Positions 24,871 through 52,123 of a stretch of 64,000 nucleotides of DNA are shown piece after piece. Source of the stretch: Ranitomeya imitator. Taxonomy: Eukaryota. Numbering within the stretch: the first letter of the stretch is position 1; each line of letters starts with the position of its first letter. The stretch lies in NCBI RefSeq assembly GCF_032444005.1, contig NC_091287.1, forward strand, positions 418,066,001 through 418,130,000, in the 5' to 3' direction. The notes below the pieces were generated by a model. The model had not been told where the DNA came from, ran no database searches, and saw only the letters and a list, made by a program, of their open reading frames with translations. Made by a program: the position numbers and the translations under genes.

Positions 24871-27154
24871 CTAAAGACTTTGGTACTGCACGGGAGTATT
24901 GTCTGCCCAACTATATGATGGACTGCTACATTGTCTTTGAGGTTCCACGCTCGTTTCACCCCGGCCTCTATATTGAGGGTTGTAGGGCGGCATGTCCAGT
25001 CTTCTTCTTCCCGATGGAGCGGGTTCCTCGGTGCCCACAAATTCCTCTACAAGCTCGTTAAGTCTTTGTCGAAACATAAGGTTTCTATGTGCCGGGATAT
25101 TTTGTACTACAGGCACATAGGATAATAAAAGTAGCTTCCACTCATTAGCAGAGTAGACAGACTCGCGTGCTTGCAGCTCGGTAATTTCTCGTCTCAGGTC
25201 TTTGAGCTCACTGCGACACATGTCCTCTACCCGTTGGAGTCCATCCACGATAATTGCATCTGCTTCATCTTTTTGAGATGCTCGCTTGCGTCCACGCTGT
25301 GATTGCAATCGGGCACTCACACCTGCAGCAACAGTGCTTCTATCCGCAGATCGTGGCTCGCTGATGCCAGACACATCTTCAGGTTGCGTTGGTTCCACTG
25401 AAGAAGGCTCAAGTTCCTCTGCTGGTCTAGGAGCAGCGGTACTGCATATCGTGCTGTAACCCAAAAACAAAAATTACTTATTTTCCTTTAAACAATTTAG
25501 TCTCGCACACAGACCTTCTTGTACTTACGAGCGCTGAGACACTGTTTTCTGAAGAAAGAGCAGTTGGTCATAATGCACATACGGTGTCACCCGTTTGCCA
25601 CTTGATCCGCTTGGTGCATTCTGACTGTTCCGGCAGTCACGGACAAAGCGATCGCGGATGGACTTCCAACGGGTATGGACAGCATCGGCTTTAAATTTAA
25701 AAAAAATATATATATATATAAAAATAGTAGATTGTGTTAAGATATAGGAAAAATTGTTCATAGTTTGCTACGATAGTTGATATATAAATAGTAGATAGAT
25801 AGTTGTTAGATAAGAAATAGTGTAGAAATAGTGTGTAGAAATAGTGTATAGATAGATAGATATATAGTGTACAGATAGTTGATAATTGAGAGATAGATAG
25901 CAGACAACAAGTGGATAGGTTGATAGGATAGAAAAATTATTTTTTTTTAAACATTTTCCGATGTTACGTCACCAATATTTACCAATTTTTTTCTTTGAGG
26001 TTGTCGACTTCTCCATGTATCGGGGATCAAAGTGACTGATTATTTGATCCCACAACTTCCGGTTCTTCACGATGTCATGGTGGGAGCTGTCGCTCTGGTC
26101 CCATATGGAGGGGTTGGCTTCCCCAAGGTTAATAAGTGTCTCATTGTGGATAGTCAATGGCTCTTCGTCAACGACAATCCTTTTTTTTTTTTTGTCGCTG
26201 ACTTGGACTATGTAAACACAAAACGTTATGTTGATAGTGTCAATTTCACTGGATGGCCATATTCATATATACAGAGATAGATAGATACATAGATATAGCA
26301 ATATATAGATATATAGATAGATAGATAGATGTAGATAGATATATATACATTGATAGANNNNNNNNNNNNNNNNNNNNNNNNNNNNNNNNNNNNNNNNNNN
26401 NNNNNNNNNNNNNNNNNNNNNNNNNNNNNNNNNNNNNNNNNNNNNNNNNNNNNNNNNNNNNNNNNNNNNNNNNNNNNNNNNNNNNNNNNNNNNNNNNNNN
26501 NNNNNNNNNNNNNNNNNNNNNNNNNNNNNNNNNNNNNNNNNNNNNNNNNNNNNNNNNNNNNNNNNNNNNNNNNNNNNNNNNNNNNNNNNNNNNNNNNNNN
26601 NNNNNNNNNNNNNNNNNNNNNNNNNNNNNNNNNNNNNNNNNNNNNNNNNNNNNNNNNNNNNNNNNNNNNNNNNNNNCGATAGATAGTTGATAGATAGTTT
26701 ATAGGTATAGTAGATAGAAAGTGAATAGATAGATTGTTGGTAAATATTGGATAGAATATTTCTATTTTATATTTACCACTGGCAGTTGTGGCGACGACAG
26801 ACGTCTAGGGACCTTTTTTCTTTTTTGTCCTCCTTGTGCCACAACGTATTGTGTATGTAAAAAAAAATATTTTAACATTAAATAATGTTAACATTCATTG
26901 GATCAATAAATTTATGCCTGAAAAATTCAACATGTGTGCTATGTACCTTTGTTGTTTTTGCGTGTTTTTTGGGGGGAGATCTAACAGCCTCGGGCTCAGA
27001 AGACTCCTATTCACAATAAAACAATAAACAGGATTGTTACGCCTAGCTCAATACAATGGAGTTTCACACAACATGGTTTTTTAAAGTGCAAGCCTACCGA
27101 CTCAGAAGAAAAAATCGCAGACACGCTGCTGCTGCTGACATCTGTATCCGACAT
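24871..27154 (-). CDS. Harbinger ORF2, MADF/Myb-SANT-like DNA-binding protein with C-terminal BESS-like motif; predicted exons 27154-27098, 27006-26947, possibly ~26832-26777, 26207-25983, 25688-25529, 25453-24871
   Basis: The last three exons splice in frame through canonical GT-AG sites, giving ...NPSIWDQ...KLWDQI...KKI|ADAVHTRWKSIRDRFVRD...PYVHYDQLLFL...S|TICS... (MADF pattern) and a C-terminal LLSYVPVVQNIPAHRNLMFRQRLNELV (BESS-like). Upstream micro-exons are MSDTDVSSSSVSAIFSSES and ESSEPEAVRSPPKKHAKTTK. The 5' junctions are uncertain because of the N-gap and an A13 run. Confidence 0.8.
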
Positions 27155-27934
27155 CTGTGTGCAACAAAACAATACATTTTTAGTACACACACATCCGACG
27201 GACATTACAGACTCCCATGATGTATACAGAGATATATAATATATAGAAATGTACTTACAATTTATAAGAGCTACGGCAAAACACTCTGTCACGTGCAGGA
27301 GACTTTGTGTGAGTGGGATATTTTAATGGCCGAAGTCACATTTCCTGTCACATGACCACATGTGACCACCCTCTAACGCTATTAAAACGTGTGGTTCTAT
27401 TTGGAAATTTTTCTTGATTTGCGTCTGACTGCGTTTGCCATAGCCTTCTATGGCAGAATGAACGCTTCCGTTAGTAGTGCGTTAGCTTGGCCGGACCCGA
27501 AAACGCTGCAAGCCGCGTTGAAGGTCCGTCAGAAAAAAAACGTTATGTGACAAACGCATACCAATTTAGGGATGCGTCACGATGCGTCAGACAATGCAAG
27601 TCTATGGGCGCGTTAGTATGTGCGTTACATTGCGTTTTTACTACTTAAAAACTAGTCCGTTAGACGGACACACCTAGCGCAATGTGAACCCAGCCTTAGT
27701 TGCAGAACAGAAAGCAGGGGTAGGGTGATAGACAGAAATAAGGGACAAGATTTATGGTGGTGTAGAACTGTGGACAGCTTTGTGGGTAAGAGCGATGTGC
27801 TTATATTGTACTGTAGTAGATGGTCAACCAGTGCAATGACTGGCACAAGATGGAGGCATCGGTGTAGCTGCTGGACTGAAATATGACCCTGGCTGCAGCA
27901 TTCAGGATGGATTGGAGAGGAGATAGTTTGGTAA

Positions 27935-29937: not shown

Positions 29938-30059
29938 ATGCCGGGTCCTACCCAAACGCTGTCCCCAAATGGAGAAAACAACAACCACGACATCATCCAT
30001 GATAATGGAAGCATCATCCCTTTTAGGAAGCACACGGTGCGGGGAGAGCGCTCCTACAG
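29938..30059 (+). CDS. MAPRE2: First coding exon of microtubule end-binding protein EB2/RP1 (MPGPTQTLSPNGENNNHDIIHDNGSIIPFRKHTVRGERSY-S), ending at a phase-2 GT donor
   Basis: Manual translation from ATG 29938 closely matches the vertebrate MAPRE2 N-terminus as I recall it (MPGPTQTLSPNGENNNDIIQDNNGTIIPFRKHTVRGERSYSWGM). The 122-nt exon ends TACAG|GTAATC. This frame is absent from the ORF track because a stop follows the donor. Exon 2 (WGMAVNVYSTS...) was not found in the window. Confidence 0.93.
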
Positions 30060-46700: not shown

Positions 46701-49276
46701 AGAATGGCTCTTACTGCTCTTTCGAATAGATTGTTCTCATACCTGAAATTCTCTTTAAAAACAAAAATGTTGATAGATGATCTAAGCAGGACTGAATTTC
46801 TAACCTCCAGCACATTTTATTCCAACATCTGTGTTTGATTCCGATTCACCACTGCTGGAGATCTAGGACATCATTGTGTGACGTTGCACCATGATATGAG
46901 AAAAAGCCTTCTGCATTAGCACAGCCTGCCCTGGATAGAGGAATTAATGTTTAAATCAACGCCAACTCTAGAACATAACAGATGGCTCCTCCTAAGGCCT
47001 GCCTGCTCCCCCATCGAAGCCGTAGAATGCCAATATTCCTGTATTGTATGCTCCATGCGTTTGGCAGTAGTTCGGGATGGTGCTAGTGACCTAGCTTAGA
47101 GAACGAGTCTGCGGATGAGTCTCTTACATCAGAAGACACTGATAAATCTCTATTGACACGGTCAGACAATACAGGTCTTCACAAAGTTTCTGGAGCTCTT
47201 ACACATGTGTAACATTTGACCCAAACCTGTTAATGTTATTAGAGCGTATGGCTTATGCAGCATGATTTATCCAAGGTTCTGACACTGTCCGCGAAAAATG
47301 TAAAAAATTACTTTTTAAATATTGTGCTCGATCTCAACTGAGAGGTAACATCTGTTACAGAAAGCGCAACCTAGAAAGCAAATCAATGTCCCAATTCCTA
47401 AACTGAGTACTTAATGGTATGATGCTATATCCATAATATGTATATTAAATGGCCTATAGTTTAATATTCTGACTTGCCATAAATATCACTACGTCATTGC
47501 GGGCAGTTGGTAACTGGACTAACCATTAAAGTAATGAGAGGTTCCTCTGATGGGCCCCTAACCTTATTTGGGGTGCAAAAGAAGATGCAAAGAAATAAAA
47601 ACTAAAAAATGTTTTCATATGAAGAGTAGTTAAACATCATTTCCATCTAAATATTAAGTGCTCCACAGCTGTCGTCCTTCATCCAAGTTGTTAGAAGAAG
47701 AAAAGACTGTATAGAAGTTTTATGCTATAATAAAGGTTTGTGAGGGGGAATGCTACTGTAGCGGGGAAGGACCATGTACCAGAGAGTGGGGATCTATTCT
47801 CTATGCCCATCTCGGTCTCTGGCAACATTCTTGTGACTTCTTTGGTTAGTAAGACTTCCACTTTAGTTCACCCTTCTTAGAAAAGCATTTTTTCCCCTTT
47901 GCCTTGTTTCAATGAACATACTTTTTACAAGGAGTAAGAGGAAGAACATTCCTCCATAAAGTGAAGCCATTTGTATTGGCTCAGCTTTGAATTCTGCGAA
48001 ATTCATTAACAGAGGCCAAACATTTTTCTCTCAAATGGTAAAGTTAAAATCTCTCTGTGAATGTAAGGTTTATAAGTTTTGGGGGGTTTTGTTTTTGTTT
48101 TTTTCCCCTGAACAATATACTTTACGTATTGGCTATATGCCTGATGGTCTTTGGCCTTTTCTTTTAGCTCTATGGTTAATCTTTATGGCACAATGTGGGG
48201 CGGCCATTTTTAAGATGAGCTAGAGTTTAAAATTAGATCTACCAATGCTTTACCAACTATTAATAACACTTCAAAGAAATCCACTCTGTCTCCTATGTCT
48301 TGGTTATATTTTACTTTCTAATTGTACATTAGTTCCCTATGATTTGAGTTAAAGGGAATTTGTCTCCTAACTTGATAGCAACACAATGTAGACAGAAACC
48401 CTGATTCCAGCAATACTGGGCTGTTTAGTTTTGCTAAAATCACTGTTTTATTAGCAGGAGATTATCACTAGAGAACTAGTAAACCTGCTGCCAGGTAGTC
48501 AAACATATTCATGAGCTCTGTATTACCCCTTCACACCATTGACTGGCAGCTTTCTGTGTACACAGTGCATGGGCAGAGAGCTCTGCCACTATGACTGAAA
48601 GCCCCAGGCTGCCGGGAGGAATAAAGTTCATTTCCTCCTTGCAGTTGGACTTTCAGTTTGTTAACTGCACGGCTTCAGAACACTGTTCACAGCATTTGTT
48701 TACATGACGGATTCCCATTAATTTGAGTTTTATTCTCATTTATGAGAATATGGAGACATAGTCTAGTAATGCATGCATGTTTATCTCTTTGACTTTACAA
48801 AGATCTTGATCTTCCTATTCTTATCACCTTGTACTCATGAGTGGTGTTACCACTGTGACCTAGAATAAGAATAAATTATATCATACTGCAATTCTTTTGG
48901 CATGTGTGTAATTATCTTTCTATAATGAGTAGATACTCACAGACCTACAGCGAGCCAGAGCTGCCGCCAAAAATCTGCTATTCTATGAAGACCAGCCTTT
49001 GATCATCATGTTACACTGCTCTGCCGGATTCCCCCGTGTAAATGCCTTCTACAGCTTAGCACGTTAGCCAGTCTTTCTGCTTATGATACCTCTGAAATAG
49101 TGACTCAAACAGTTAGGTTTAGCGATTATTAGATTTTTTTTGTAGCTTTAGGCTATACAGAGTTTGTGCGTTGATGCTGATCATTTTTATTATTGTTGTT
49201 GTTATTATCATAATCAAAATCTCGTTTGTAAGGATAATTGCTTACTCTCCTCTCTTTTGATTTCTATTCTATTATG

Positions 49277-49492
49277 TATCGTTTCTCCTTATGGAGAGCC
49301 AAATCAGTTCTCATGCTTTGCACTGACGAGGGCCAACAGCCCGAAACACCGAGTCTGCGAATTGAGATACTGATTTGGCTTTTATCCTAAGTCATATTGC
49401 ACGACTCATTAAAGGGTTGATTGTTACTTGTAGGATCGCTACTTCCAACAGGTGGCGCTATAGAGTTTAAGTCCTCTTTTCCTCAATTTGCA
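49277..49492 (+). mobile_element. 216-bp hammerhead-carrying insertion (Penelope-like/retrozyme-like)
   Basis: Flanked by the 12-bp direct repeat TATTCTATTATG (49265-49276 and 49493-49504). Contains the ribozyme and no ORF. Confidence 0.6.
49297..49380 (+). ncRNA. Type I hammerhead ribozyme motif with extended stem I
   Basis: Stem I 5' TTTGCA (49317-22), core CTGACGA (49323-29), stem II GGGC-caaca-GCCC (49330-42), GAAA (49343-46), short stem III, GTC cleavage triplet (49353-55), stem I 3' TGCGAA (49356-61). Stem I is extended by TCTCA/TGAGA and AGCCAAATCAGT/ACTGATTTGGCT. Confidence 0.85.
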
Positions 49493-50098
49493 TATTCTAT
49501 TATGCAAAGCCGATTGTCTACCTATCCAATTTCTTTAAAAAAAATAAATAAAAACTAGCCTACTGATCCCTCACCACTCACTGGCCACCTCTTGGAACAA
49601 GAAGTGGACCCCTCTATTCTGGTCCTACAGACATGTGACCATTGCAGCAGTGATATTTTATCAGTCAGTGGTCACAGCAGTCCCTTGTTTTTGTCATCTC
49701 CAGAAGTGGAAACGAGGAGATAGGCTTGGGATTTGAGCAACGCCATGTATTGTTTTTATTTTTAAGACAATGTCATTTCCTAGATTGGAGTAAGAAAACA
49801 TCAGTAGACAACCACTTAAAAATGTAAAATATGCTAATCATTAATGTTTTCATTCCAAGAGGCTCCTTTCCCTTACTCTTGGTAAGCTTGTCCCTAATGA
49901 GGCAATTTTAAACTTCTTGGTGGAAATACTTAAGAGACTCTTTTATTCCACGCTCTCTCTTTTCTCTCTGTATTGATTAATTTTGGAGGCCATGTTTTTT
50001 TCTGGAGCGAATGATTGTTCTTTTACGGCACATATTATACGAAAAGTCTTACTGAACAGGTATAAGAAAATCTGCCATGCTTGTCAAATGTATTATTG

Positions 50099-50258
50099 AG
50101 TTTAATGGTAGAAGAAAAAACGGTATGCACTCACCAATCCCGGTAAAAACACTCCTTTTTATTGAAACACTCCTTCATTGGAACCTTTTATTAAAATAAA
50201 GGAGTGTTTTTACCGGTATTGGTGAGTGCATACCGTTTTTTTCTTTTACCATTGAACT
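50099..50258. repeat. ~60-bp inverted repeat, Penelope-like tail-to-tail terminus or small MITE
   Basis: Arms 50099-50159 and 50197-50258 are near-identical inverted copies containing AATAAAGGAGTG...GGTGAGTGC. Confidence 0.55.
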
Positions 50259-52123
50259 TTGCATATGACTATTGGTGTTGCACCCGAATCTCCCGACCTT
50301 TCTGAGGCGTTAAAAGCATCAAACAGCATTGAAAGGCACAGGAGGGTCGCAGTGAATCAGCGGTGCGGATAAGCTTATCTTTTCTCTTTCTTGGACAAAT
50401 GTATTGTTGCAAATTTATCAGTCAGATTTCTTTTGTAATCATAATAATAATTTTATTTCTATAGCGCCGACATATTCCGCAGCACTTTACATTTTAGATG
50501 GGACTTGTACAGGCTAAATAAACATTACAGCATAACAATAAATGCATAGATCACAACAGATACCAAGAGGAGTGAGGGCCCTGCTCACAAGCTTACAATC
50601 TGAGGAAAGGGGGAGACACGAAAGATGGATGGTAACAATTGCTTTAGTTCGGACCAGCCATAGTGTAAGAATCGGGTGTTCATGTAATGCTGCATGATCA
50701 TAATAATCATGAAATACAGTAGCTGTACAGTTGAGTATGTGTCAAGTTTACCAAATATGACATTATAACTGATAGGATGTTGCTTTTTTATCAATGTTTT
50801 TTATTCTTACATCACTGCTAAATGTACCTATCTGTTTTGTGCACTAGACAGATTTTGTCAAGGAGCTTTTGTCATTTTCCAGTTGGATGATTGTGTTTTT
50901 AAGTTGAACTTCCATCGATCTTTGTGGAAATTGTATGTGAGCTATCAACATGGATGCATGTGGACAAATGACGTGTTCATAAACAACCGGAAAACCTTGA
51001 GATGGTTGTTGTTTTGCGTTTTGCCATAGTTACTCTTTTAGTAAAGATGTAACAATGGATTTGGCTTATCCAAAAACATCTGTCTTGTACATCTGCAGTT
51101 AAAGTTATATTGCATGGAAACTGTATTACGTAGTCATTGTTATGCAGGACATAAATATTCAGAAGATTGTGTACAGCCTTCCAACAAACAATGTAAGTTA
51201 TGGATATCCTCCCATTTTACTTTGAGATCTTTTCCCCCACATATTCTGTACACCTGACATCACCCAAAAAAAAAAAACAGTCTGATGTCCTATAAAGTTA
51301 CCAATCTTGTGTATTGGCAAAAATACCACACAATGCCACAGTATTTCCATGCATGGCACAAGGATACACAGTATGATCACATTTCTTGATCTTCATCCTT
51401 TAAATAAGTGTGGGAGCATGCAAAATAACCCGGGTAAATTAAACCCCACTAATTATATATGGACCTTTGAGGCAATTCTACAAAGATCTATAATATAGTC
51501 CCTGAGGGGTAATTTCAGAGTCTACAGCTATTTTCATGTTTGTTTGGGTTTTTTCCCCTTAAGACTATATCTAACATAAACGGAGAAAACGTTTAGCAAT
51601 AGAGCGGCAGTCACTAAATTAAGGGATGGTCTTTTTGTTTTGTAAGGGCACTTTTTTCTTTATGTAAGAGAATAAAGATTAAAATAATTTTTATTAAGTT
51701 GGACGCATATTATAAATGTGGTGTTAAATTCCTCCGTAAACATTAGATGACCAACCGACCCTGCCAACATTTTTCTAATGTGTCTGGTGGGCATTAGTCT
51801 TTTCCATGGTCCTTACTAATTGGGAGAGGAACAACTCTTCAACTACCAGCCTGTTATTATTCTGTACTCTCTTTTGTATGAACTGTGGCCACTGAAAATA
51901 ACTACGGTACATACGGTAAATGTTTTTTTAGTTTTTTTCGTTTCTGCCCAATCTACTAGAACCTTTAAATAATCTTAACCACTTGTGGACACAGACAGAT
52001 AAGGGCCCCTGCGCAAGAAAAATACAGTTGTGTGACAGTGTTTGCCCCCTTAATGATTTCCTATTGTTTTGCATGTTTGTCACACATAAATTTGTTTAGT
52101 GATCTGAAAACATTTAAATCTTA

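What the first reader, a model, noticed from the sequence alone, without database searches (positions are those of the whole stretch)
49265..49504. Complete type I hammerhead ribozyme in a 216-bp retrozyme-like insertion, sense to the MAPRE2 intron
Seen: the full conserved hammerhead core (CUGACGA / GAAA / GUC), a 4-bp stem II and a 6-bp stem I, continued by a further 5+12 bp of perfect pairing. The unit is bracketed by a 12-bp direct repeat (TATTCTATTATG) and has no ORF. Established: short type I hammerheads occur in Penelope-like elements, retrozymes and newt satellite-2 transcripts. Their weak stem III often needs dimerisation, and here stem III is only 2 bp plus a 5-nt loop. Inference: this is a member of a small ribozyme-encoding mobile RNA family. 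Because it lies on the MAPRE2 sense strand, it could cleave the pre-mRNA co-transcriptionally after 49355.
Basis: partly seen in the sequence, partly recalled or inferred. Interest (0 to 1): 0.85.

Follow-up and report, generated by a model that had tools for sequence, protein, structure and literature searches.

The report
Solo hammerhead retrozyme fragment in frog intron
The hammerhead ribozyme motif is real, but it is one partial and slightly damaged copy of a very abundant, already described frog mobile element (non-LTR retrozyme, Penelope-related) in a MAPRE2 intron, so it is ordinary.

Summary
A complete type I hammerhead (HHR) lies at 49317-49361 (+). It has a 6-bp helix I, a 4-bp helix II and a 2-bp helix III, with the predicted cut after 49355. 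Helix I continues into 5+12 bp of pairing. A 216-bp insert (49277-49492) sits between perfect 12-bp direct repeats.

A descriptor scan expects about 0.003 such motifs per window by chance. Rfam Hammerhead_1 aligns end to end but scores 21.1 bits, under its gathering score of 34.

Laying public contigs shows the core 49297-49480 belongs to an enormous repeat family in this frog and a sister species. Summed depth is about 5-9x10^5 against about 10 in the flanks, and RNA libraries also hold the family.

This copy looks 5'-truncated, because most relatives continue upstream with other sequence. It also carries A at 49352 where more than 99% of family depth has T. That change breaks the third pair of helix III and most of its dimer pairing (-8.8 to -2.0 kcal/mol).

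The repeats lie outside the family core in single-copy, AT-rich DNA, as Penelope-type insertion predicts. The element is sense to a MAPRE2 intron; the exon is at 29938-30059 (+).

Nothing shows cleavage. This scan already holds hundreds of hammerhead/retrozyme notes on this genome. Known kind, low interest.

The parts
49265..49276 (.). Left copy of the 12-bp target-site duplication (TATTCTATTATG)
   Evidence: Exact direct repeat. It lies in flank with single-copy depth of about 5-10. AT-rich with ATT motifs.
49277..49492 (+). 216-bp insert as a whole
   Evidence: Bounded by the direct repeat. The left junction is confirmed by a 601-nt contig of another sample, X3, covering 48749-49349 with 0 differences. 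The right junction is covered by an X1 contig, 49473-50151.
49277..49296 (+). 20 nt at the 5' end that most family members do not share (extra nucleotides at a 5' truncation, or a minor subfamily)
   Evidence: Loose ends 'before 49297' occur in 133 (X1), 128 (X7) and 5 (X3) contigs, with a different shared upstream consensus. No significant match to the rest of the insert.
49297..49480 (+). Family-homologous core of the repeat
   Evidence: Summed contig depth is 5.2-8.9x10^5 against about 10 in the flanks, in DNA runs of organisms A and B. The listed family pieces end at 49478-49480.
49317..49361 (+). Type I hammerhead ribozyme; predicted cut between 49355 and 49356
   Evidence: RF00163 aligned over model positions 1-45/45 at 21.1 bits, below gathering 34. 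Descriptor scan. Sequence read.
49297..49380 (+). Long hairpin that closes helix I: 12 bp, a bulge, 5 bp, a 3x1 internal loop, then the 6-bp helix I
   Evidence: The internal loop 49314-16/49362 sits where loop 1 of canonical metazoan type I hammerheads lies (6-bp helix I, 4-bp helix II; PMC4209133).
49352..49352 (+). Copy-specific A (family T) that breaks the third pair of helix III
   Evidence: T accounts for 818433 of 819480 depth in X1 and 774051 of 774324 in X7. Helix III self-dimer pairing is -8.8 kcal/mol with T and -2.0 with A.
49481..49492 (+). 12-nt 3' extension beyond the point where the listed family pieces stop; possibly an optional 'tail' from a second reverse-transcription start site
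   Evidence: Listed pieces end at 49478-80. The tail idea comes from PMC11167929 and is inference only.
49493..49504 (.). Right copy of the target-site duplication
   Evidence: A contig of organism B aligns from the right flank up to exactly 49493 and then runs on for 140 nt that do not fit the element.
29938..30059 (+). MAPRE2 (EB2) first coding exon, which sets the sense strand of the intron
   Evidence: ATG at 29938. The translation MPGPTQTLSPNGENNN...PFRKHTVRGERSY is followed by AG|GTAAT. The gene identity rests on my own recall of the human EB2 N-terminus. The Atlas and PDB searches gave nothing.

Best explanation
This is a solo, probably 5'-truncated retro-copy of a very high-copy, non-coding retroelement family of this poison frog that carries a hammerhead. 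The family is a non-LTR retrozyme, the class now argued to derive from the terminal repeats (pLTRs) of Penelope-like elements.

The life cycle of the family is taken from the literature and was not shown here. Tandem units are transcribed. Hammerheads with a short helix III pair up as dimers between neighbouring units and cut the RNA into monomers. A tRNA ligase circularises the monomers. A Penelope-type reverse transcriptase/endonuclease nicks AT-rich DNA and copies the RNA in, starting at internal sites.

At this locus that process pasted 216 bp into the AT-rich target TATTCTATTATG in a MAPRE2 intron, on the sense strand, duplicating 12 bp. The insertion probably happened after the split from sister species B.

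The copy holds one whole hammerhead but no second one, so it cannot release or circularise a monomer. Its helix III is further weakened by a T-to-A change at 49352. It is therefore most likely an inert passenger of the intron that cuts the pre-mRNA rarely or not at all.
For: - Motif: present and far beyond chance.
- Family: depth 5-9x10^5 against about 10 in the flanks, in DNA of organisms A and B. The family's k-mers occur in RNA libraries of at least four labelled species.
- Conservation: within 49317-49361 the only major difference listed between this copy and the family is 49352, and the family letter restores a base pair.
- Architecture: 6-bp helix I, 4-bp helix II and a short helix III match the 'canonical' metazoan type I hammerhead (PMC4209133).
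- Boundaries: the repeat lies outside the family core, in single-copy, AT-rich DNA. A Penelope-like element's endonuclease nicks AT-rich/ATT sites, and its reverse transcriptase starts internally (PMC11167929).
- Truncation: more than 130 family contigs per DNA run carry a shared different sequence upstream of 49297.
- Real junction: another sample bridges the left junction with 0 differences.
- Known kind: amphibian retrozymes, monomer copies and their frequent intronic location are described (PMC7229834; bioRxiv 10.64898/2026.07.22.740005). This scan holds hundreds of hammerhead notes for this genome, with units of 312-384 bp.
Against: - No other family copy could be read base by base, so unit length, true termini and stem covariation are untested.
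- The Rfam score is below gathering.
- The family boundaries rest on the few loose ends and pieces that read laying listed out of about 45,000.
- The 20 nt at the 5' end and 12 nt at the 3' end are unexplained.
- The empty site in organism B is only hinted at. A contig runs on unaligned past 49493, but no joint skipping the insert was listed.
- Self-cleavage was neither shown nor excluded.
Confidence: 0.78

Rival explanations
1. The 216 bp is one complete monomer of a short retrozyme family, reverse-transcribed once around a circular RNA. That would explain why its ends are permuted relative to the cleavage site.
For: 216 nt lies within the published 170-400 nt range (PMC7229834). The insert ends are not at the cleavage site. 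The last 11 nt loosely resemble the strand just before the hammerhead core (10 of 11 with a 2-nt gap).
Against: The first 20 nt and last 12 nt are not shared by the family contigs that were listed. Those contigs continue upstream of 49297 with another common sequence. The ends do not overlap each other as a copy of more than one unit from a circle would. Units reported elsewhere in this genome are 312-384 bp (unchecked).
Confidence: 0.1
2. It is a 5'-truncated end (pLTR) of an autonomous Penelope-like element, not a copy of a non-autonomous retrozyme.
For: Penelope-like elements carry hammerheads in their pLTRs, are usually 5'-truncated and insert at AT-rich sites (PMC4209133, PMC11167929). 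Xenopus retrozyme families are sister to pLTRs (bioRxiv 10.64898/2026.07.22.740005).
Against: Metazoan Penelope-like elements mostly carry 'minimal' hammerheads with a long helix II and no helix III (PMC4209133). This one has the canonical 6/4-bp architecture typical of retrozymes. No adjacent element body exists: the flanks are single-copy and no long ORF overlaps the insert. The two classes grade into each other, so the distinction is partly semantic.
Confidence: 0.1
3. It is a working intronic ribozyme that cleaves MAPRE2 pre-mRNA after 49355 and affects its expression, or makes a discrete intronic RNA.
For: Sense orientation in the intron. The catalytic core is complete. In runs of study P2 a covered block of about 0.95 kb ends at the element.
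Against: There is no tandem partner for dimer formation and helix III is weakened. Vertebrate monomers cleave poorly (PMC7229834). In X3 the copy-specific letters on both sides of the cut stand at similar depth (about 160 at 49352, about 132 at 49425, 173 in the left flank). The block ends near 49.52 kb, just before an A-rich tract, not at 49355. The insert is young, not conserved. RNA run X13 shows no flank coverage.
Confidence: 0.04
4. It is a chance match to the hammerhead consensus, or an assembly artefact.
For: Rfam score below gathering. In a genome of several gigabases the relaxed descriptor would give hundreds of chance hits (extrapolated).
Against: The motif sits in a family of very high copy number in which the core is conserved, and where the family letter, not this copy's, completes helix III. 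Both junctions are seen in independent contigs.
Confidence: 0.01

Closest known systems
Amphibian non-LTR retrozymes (axolotl Rtz331/Rtz353; Xenopus families) - PMC7229834, bioRxiv 10.64898/2026.07.22.740005
   Same: Small, non-coding and of very high copy number. Canonical type I hammerhead with 6-bp helix I, 4-bp helix II and a short helix III that favours dimers. Target-site duplications longer than 4 bp. Present in RNA. Monomer copies are dispersed and are common in introns.
   Different: This copy is solo and apparently partial, not a tandem array. One hammerhead only, with a helix III substitution. Family unit length and circular RNA were not determined here.
Newt satellite 2 hammerhead (Epstein and Gall 1987; Forster et al. 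1988, as cited in PMC7229834)
   Same: Amphibian repeat with a type I hammerhead whose weak helix III makes it active mainly as a dimer.
   Different: Satellite 2 is a tandem repeat of about 330 bp. Here there is a dispersed single insertion with a target-site duplication. The family helix III is 3 bp with a 3-nt loop, rather than 1 bp with a palindromic tetraloop.
pLTR hammerheads of Penelope-like elements (PMC4209133) and Penelope-like element insertion (PMC11167929)
   Same: Hammerhead tied to a retroelement. AT-rich target. Ends set by internal reverse-transcription starts rather than by RNA ends. Optional 3' tail.
   Different: No RT/GIY-YIG ORF is attached. The hammerhead is canonical, not the 'minimal' type of metazoan Penelope-like elements.
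[quoted passage not shown]
   Same: Type I hammerhead lying sense within an intron of a protein-coding gene.
   Different: Those are single-copy and conserved across amniotes, which suggests function. This is a young copy of a transposable element, apparently absent at the site in the sister species.

Membership tests
Hammerhead ribozyme type I (Rfam RF00163) | Conserved core: C3-U-G-A-N-G-A9, G12-A-A14, A15.1-U16.1 and H17 | tested here: met
   CUGACGA, GAAA, A49346-U49354 and C17 at 49355.
Hammerhead ribozyme type I (Rfam RF00163) | Three helices around the core, with helix I open-ended | tested here: met
   Helix I 6 bp, helix II 4 bp, helix III 2 bp (3 bp in the family consensus); full-length model alignment 1-45/45.
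Hammerhead ribozyme type I (Rfam RF00163) | Score at or above Rfam's gathering threshold (34 bits) | tested here: not met
   21.1 bits, E 0.002 on 68 nt. No hit in the whole-window or 451-nt scans.
Hammerhead ribozyme type I (Rfam RF00163) | Self-cleavage at H17 | not testable with these tools
   Only contigs were available and they carry no read ends (table 6 empty).
Hammerhead ribozyme type I (Rfam RF00163) | Covariation that supports the helices across homologues | tested here: inconclusive
   No family copies could be fetched. The only indirect support is that the family letter at 49352 restores a helix III pair.
Metazoan non-LTR retrozyme | Small non-coding repeat carrying a type I hammerhead | tested here: met
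Metazoan non-LTR retrozyme | Tandem arrangement with one hammerhead per unit, so that monomers can be excised | tested here: not met
   This locus holds a single copy and a single hammerhead in 64 kb. Tandem arrays of hammerhead units elsewhere in the genome are reported only in other notes of this scan, which I did not check.
Metazoan non-LTR retrozyme | Multi-copy family with target-site duplications longer than 4 bp and low GC | tested here: met
   Depth 5-9x10^5 against about 10. 12-bp duplication.
Metazoan non-LTR retrozyme | Expression as linear and circular RNA of 170-400 nt | tested here: inconclusive
   Family k-mers and contigs occur in RNA-labelled runs, but DNA carry-over is not excluded and no back-joined contig was listed.
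Penelope-like element (autonomous) | RT plus GIY-YIG ORF flanked by pLTRs | tested here: not met
   No ORF longer than 69 aa overlaps the insert. The flanks are single-copy sequence.

The most novel reading that the evidence does not exclude
Despite its weakened helix III, this sense-strand hammerhead may still cut a fraction of MAPRE2 pre-mRNA, or help define the discrete block of about 0.95 kb (about 48.57-49.52 kb) seen in all samples of study P2. That would make it a young transposon-derived ribozyme that shapes a host transcript.
Probability: 0.04. Interest if true: 0.5.

Novelty: new member of a known kind. Interest (0 to 1): 0.14.

Why it matters
It matters little on its own. It is one more copy of a class (amphibian non-LTR retrozymes, Penelope-related) already described in the literature and noted hundreds of times in this genome by this scan.

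Its modest value is as a clean, dated example. It is a single event bounded by a target-site duplication, in an AT-rich site of a gene intron, on the sense strand, and apparently absent in a sister species.

Such copies, collected genome-wide, could test whether sense-oriented hammerheads are selected against in introns. They could also show where Penelope-type reverse transcription starts and stops on retrozyme RNA.

Tried and rejected
- Rfam at gathering score on the whole window and at E<=10 on 451 nt found no hammerhead. Only a 68-nt query brought up RF00163, below threshold.
- I tried to fetch other family copies. A self-BLAST of the window found none. Exact-pattern scans of metagenome contigs (two patterns), prokaryote genome contigs and viral contigs gave 0 hits. 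The scan's own index by sequence gave nothing. The supplements of the 2026 retrozyme preprint hold no matching sequence. So no alignment, covariance model or covariation test was possible.
- I tested whether the unit is a roughly 187-nt tandem monomer, by comparing the family's upstream loose-end consensus with this copy's 3' end. There was no significant match, so I rejected it.
- I considered a SINE or tRNA-derived origin. ARAGORN found no tRNA, Rfam found no tRNA, 7SL or 5S match, and there is no poly(A) tail. Rejected.
- I tried to confirm the MAPRE2 exon with tools. The protein Atlas and PDB sequences gave nothing for the 40-aa exon, so the gene identity rests on my recall of the human EB2 N-terminus.
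- A raw count of 12-mer direct repeats 150-400 nt apart in the window is high (515) because of tandem and low-complexity DNA. It is therefore no use as a null. I relied instead on the local scan (one repeat in 800 bp) and on the position of the repeat just outside the repeat family.
Full report

- Helix I: UUUGCA 49317-22 pairs with UGCGAA 49356-61, giving 6 bp with one G-U.
- Core and helices II and III: CUGACGA 49323-29; helix II GGGC/GCCC with loop CAACA, 49330-42; GAAA 49343-46; a 2-bp helix III (A49346-U49354, C49347-G49353) around a 5-nt loop; GUC 49353-55. The scissile bond is therefore 49355/49356.
- Beyond helix I come a 3x1 internal loop, 5 bp, a bulged U and 12 perfect bp (49297-308/49369-80).
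- The 91-nt stretch folds at -38.5 kcal/mol, z = -6.8 against shuffles.
- A perfect 12-bp direct repeat, TATTCTATTATG, lies at 49265-76 and 49493-504. It is the only direct repeat of 10 nt or more in 49000-49800 and encloses exactly 216 bp.
- Only short TTG-start ORFs overlap the insert, and there is no tRNA.

**Chance.** A descriptor of my own asks for the core boxes, helix II of 3 bp or more, helix III of 2 bp or more ending in U-H, and helix I of 5 bp or more. It hits only this site in the window. It hits 0.003 times per simulated 64-kb window, and 0 in 300 simulations at the stem lengths seen here. In a frog genome of several gigabases the relaxed descriptor would still give some hundreds of chance hits, so the motif alone would not be proof.

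**Rfam.** There is no match at gathering score on the window and none at E<=10 on 451 nt. When only 68 nt are given, Hammerhead_1 (RF00163) aligns over its whole model (1-45/45) at 49317-49361. It scores 21.1 bits, below the gathering score of 34, with one helix III pair marked non-canonical.

**What it belongs to.** Notes of this scan say the genome is a poison frog. They list hundreds of hammerhead findings, with retrozyme units of 312, 316, 353 and 384 bp. These are leads I did not check. The window holds only one copy.

Public runs gave the decisive evidence.

- The 216 bp shares 39-50% of its sampled 31-mers with RNA-labelled runs of organisms A, B, C, E and F. That is about the share expected if those runs hold only family-consensus words.
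- Laying contigs of four runs on 47500-51500 shows summed depth of 5.2x10^5 and 8.9x10^5 in the two bins covering the insert, against about 10 in the adjacent unique flanks. This holds both in the species itself (X1) and in a relative about 95-96% identical (X7). The tool warns that this is not a copy number, but it points to roughly 10^4-10^5 copies.
- The RNA-labelled run X13 holds family contigs at depth 3x10^3-1.3x10^4, with zero depth in the flanks.

**Anatomy of this copy relative to its family.**

- Family homology starts sharply at 49297, the base of the long hairpin. There, 133 (X1), 128 (X7) and 5 (X3) contigs carry a loose end 'before' that position, with a shared but different upstream sequence. 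The family therefore continues 5' of what this copy holds.
- The listed family pieces stop at 49478-49480.
- So 20 nt (49277-96) and 12 nt (49481-92) of the insert are not typical family sequence. They do not match the other end of the insert as a read-round of a circle would.
- At three positions more than 93% of family depth differs from this copy: 49352 (A here; T in 99.9% of X1 depth), 49408 and 49425.
- Position 49352 lies in helix III. With T the helix is A-U, C-G, A-U with a 3-nt loop; here the third pair is A.A. Helix III strands of two ribozymes would pair at -8.8 kcal/mol with T but only -2.0 with A, and neither forms a stable hairpin alone.
- The family thus has the short-helix-III, dimer-prone design known from newts and axolotl (PMC4209133, PMC7229834), and this copy has lost most of that.

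**Insertion.**

- The direct repeat lies outside the family core, in single-copy DNA.
- A 601-nt contig of another sample (X3) spans 48749-49349 with no difference. An X1 contig spans 49473-50151. The junctions are therefore real.
- In organism B a contig aligns from 50093 down to exactly 49493, the first base of the right repeat copy. It then continues for 140 nt that fit nothing in the laid stretch, the element included, without breaking as contigs do in the high-copy repeat. This hints at an empty site in B, but no joint skipping the insert was among those listed, so it is not shown.
- The target is AT-rich with ATT motifs. The insert's ends are unrelated to the ribozyme cut site and there is no poly(A). 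This fits what was found in vitro for a Penelope-like element: nicking at AT-rich/ATT DNA, reverse transcription starting at internal RNA sites without homology to the target, and an optional tail between two start sites (PMC11167929). Calling the 12-nt 3' extension such a tail is my inference.

**Host gene.** A regex for EB2 N-terminal motifs, typed from my memory of the human protein, found an exon on the + strand. It has ATG at 29938 and reads MPGPTQTLSPNGENNN...PFRKHTVRGERSY, followed by AG|GTAAT at 30059/60. No motif of the CH-domain or EB1-domain exons occurs in the window. Tools could not confirm the gene name.

**Does it cut?** This was not shown.

- The locus has one hammerhead and no partner, and a weakened helix III.
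- Axolotl monomers self-cleave only 6-22% in an hour, while dimers do much better (PMC7229834).
- One unplanned observation bears on it. In run X3 (kind unknown; five sister samples behave alike) a block of about 48.57-49.52 kb is covered at depth 110-180, while the DNA further out on both sides is at 0.
- In that run the copy-specific letters are 20-40 times enriched over their share in DNA. A at 49352 stands at about 160 of 3184, and T at 49425 at about 132 of 3383, against 0.13% and 0.24% in X1. This very copy is therefore covered about equally on both sides of the predicted cut.
- The block ends just before an A-rich tract at 49540-57, not at 49355.
- If X3 is oligo-dT-primed RNA, this looks like internal priming or intronic polyadenylation on uncut sense pre-mRNA. 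If it is ATAC or capture DNA, it says nothing.

**Comparison and novelty.**

- The architecture equals the canonical metazoan type I hammerhead (6-bp helix I, 4-bp helix II, short helix III; PMC4209133).
- The carrier fits non-LTR retrozymes (PMC7229834). A 2026 preprint finds these in all seven amphibians sampled, with variable shares of monomer copies and 42-44% of Xenopus copies overlapping introns. It also finds them phylogenetically nested with the pLTRs of Penelope-like elements (bioRxiv 10.64898/2026.07.22.740005).
- This locus fails the tandem-array criterion, so it is a derivative copy and not an active retrozyme.
- It is a new member of a known kind and was already found many times on other DNA of this genome by this scan.

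**Limits.**

- No second family sequence could be read. Unit length, termini and covariation remain open.
- The family boundaries rest on the small part of the read laying tables that was printed.

Noticed in passing
window 48570-49520: In run X3 (organism A, another sample, library kind unknown; sister samples X4-X6, X38 and X39 show similar shares) a discrete block is covered at contig depth 110-180 while the DNA further out on both sides is at 0. It ends at the element's right end, just before the A-rich tract 49540-49557. It could be internal priming or intronic polyadenylation on MAPRE2 pre-mRNA, a separate transcript, or open chromatin or a capture target.
   Followed up: partly
window 29938-30059 (+): First coding exon of MAPRE2/EB2 (MPGPTQTLSPNGENNN...RGERSY) with an AG|GTAAT donor. 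No further MAPRE2 exon motif occurs up to the window end, so the intron is at least 34 kb long.
   Followed up: partly
window 48426-48600: Another high-copy repeat (summed depth about 1.2x10^5 in the DNA runs, also present in RNA runs). Many 'opposite strands' joints around 48470-48580 suggest a fold-back, MITE-like element.
   Followed up: no
window 50448-50715: A third very abundant repeat (depth about 3.4x10^5, at 4.8x10^5 higher still in organism B), containing TATAGCGCCGACATATTCCGCAGCAC... It is strongly represented in RNA runs.
   Followed up: no
window 49481-49492 vs 49310-49322: The last 11 nt of the insert (CTCAATTTGCA) resemble the strand just upstream of the hammerhead core (CTCATGCTTTGCA), 10 of 11 with a 2-nt gap. 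This may be chance, or the start of a next unit in the RNA template.
   Followed up: partly
window 22915-27695: A first-reader note on this window reports a near-complete two-gene Harbinger transposon here. I did not examine it. A masked N run (26358-26676) lies inside it.
   Followed up: no
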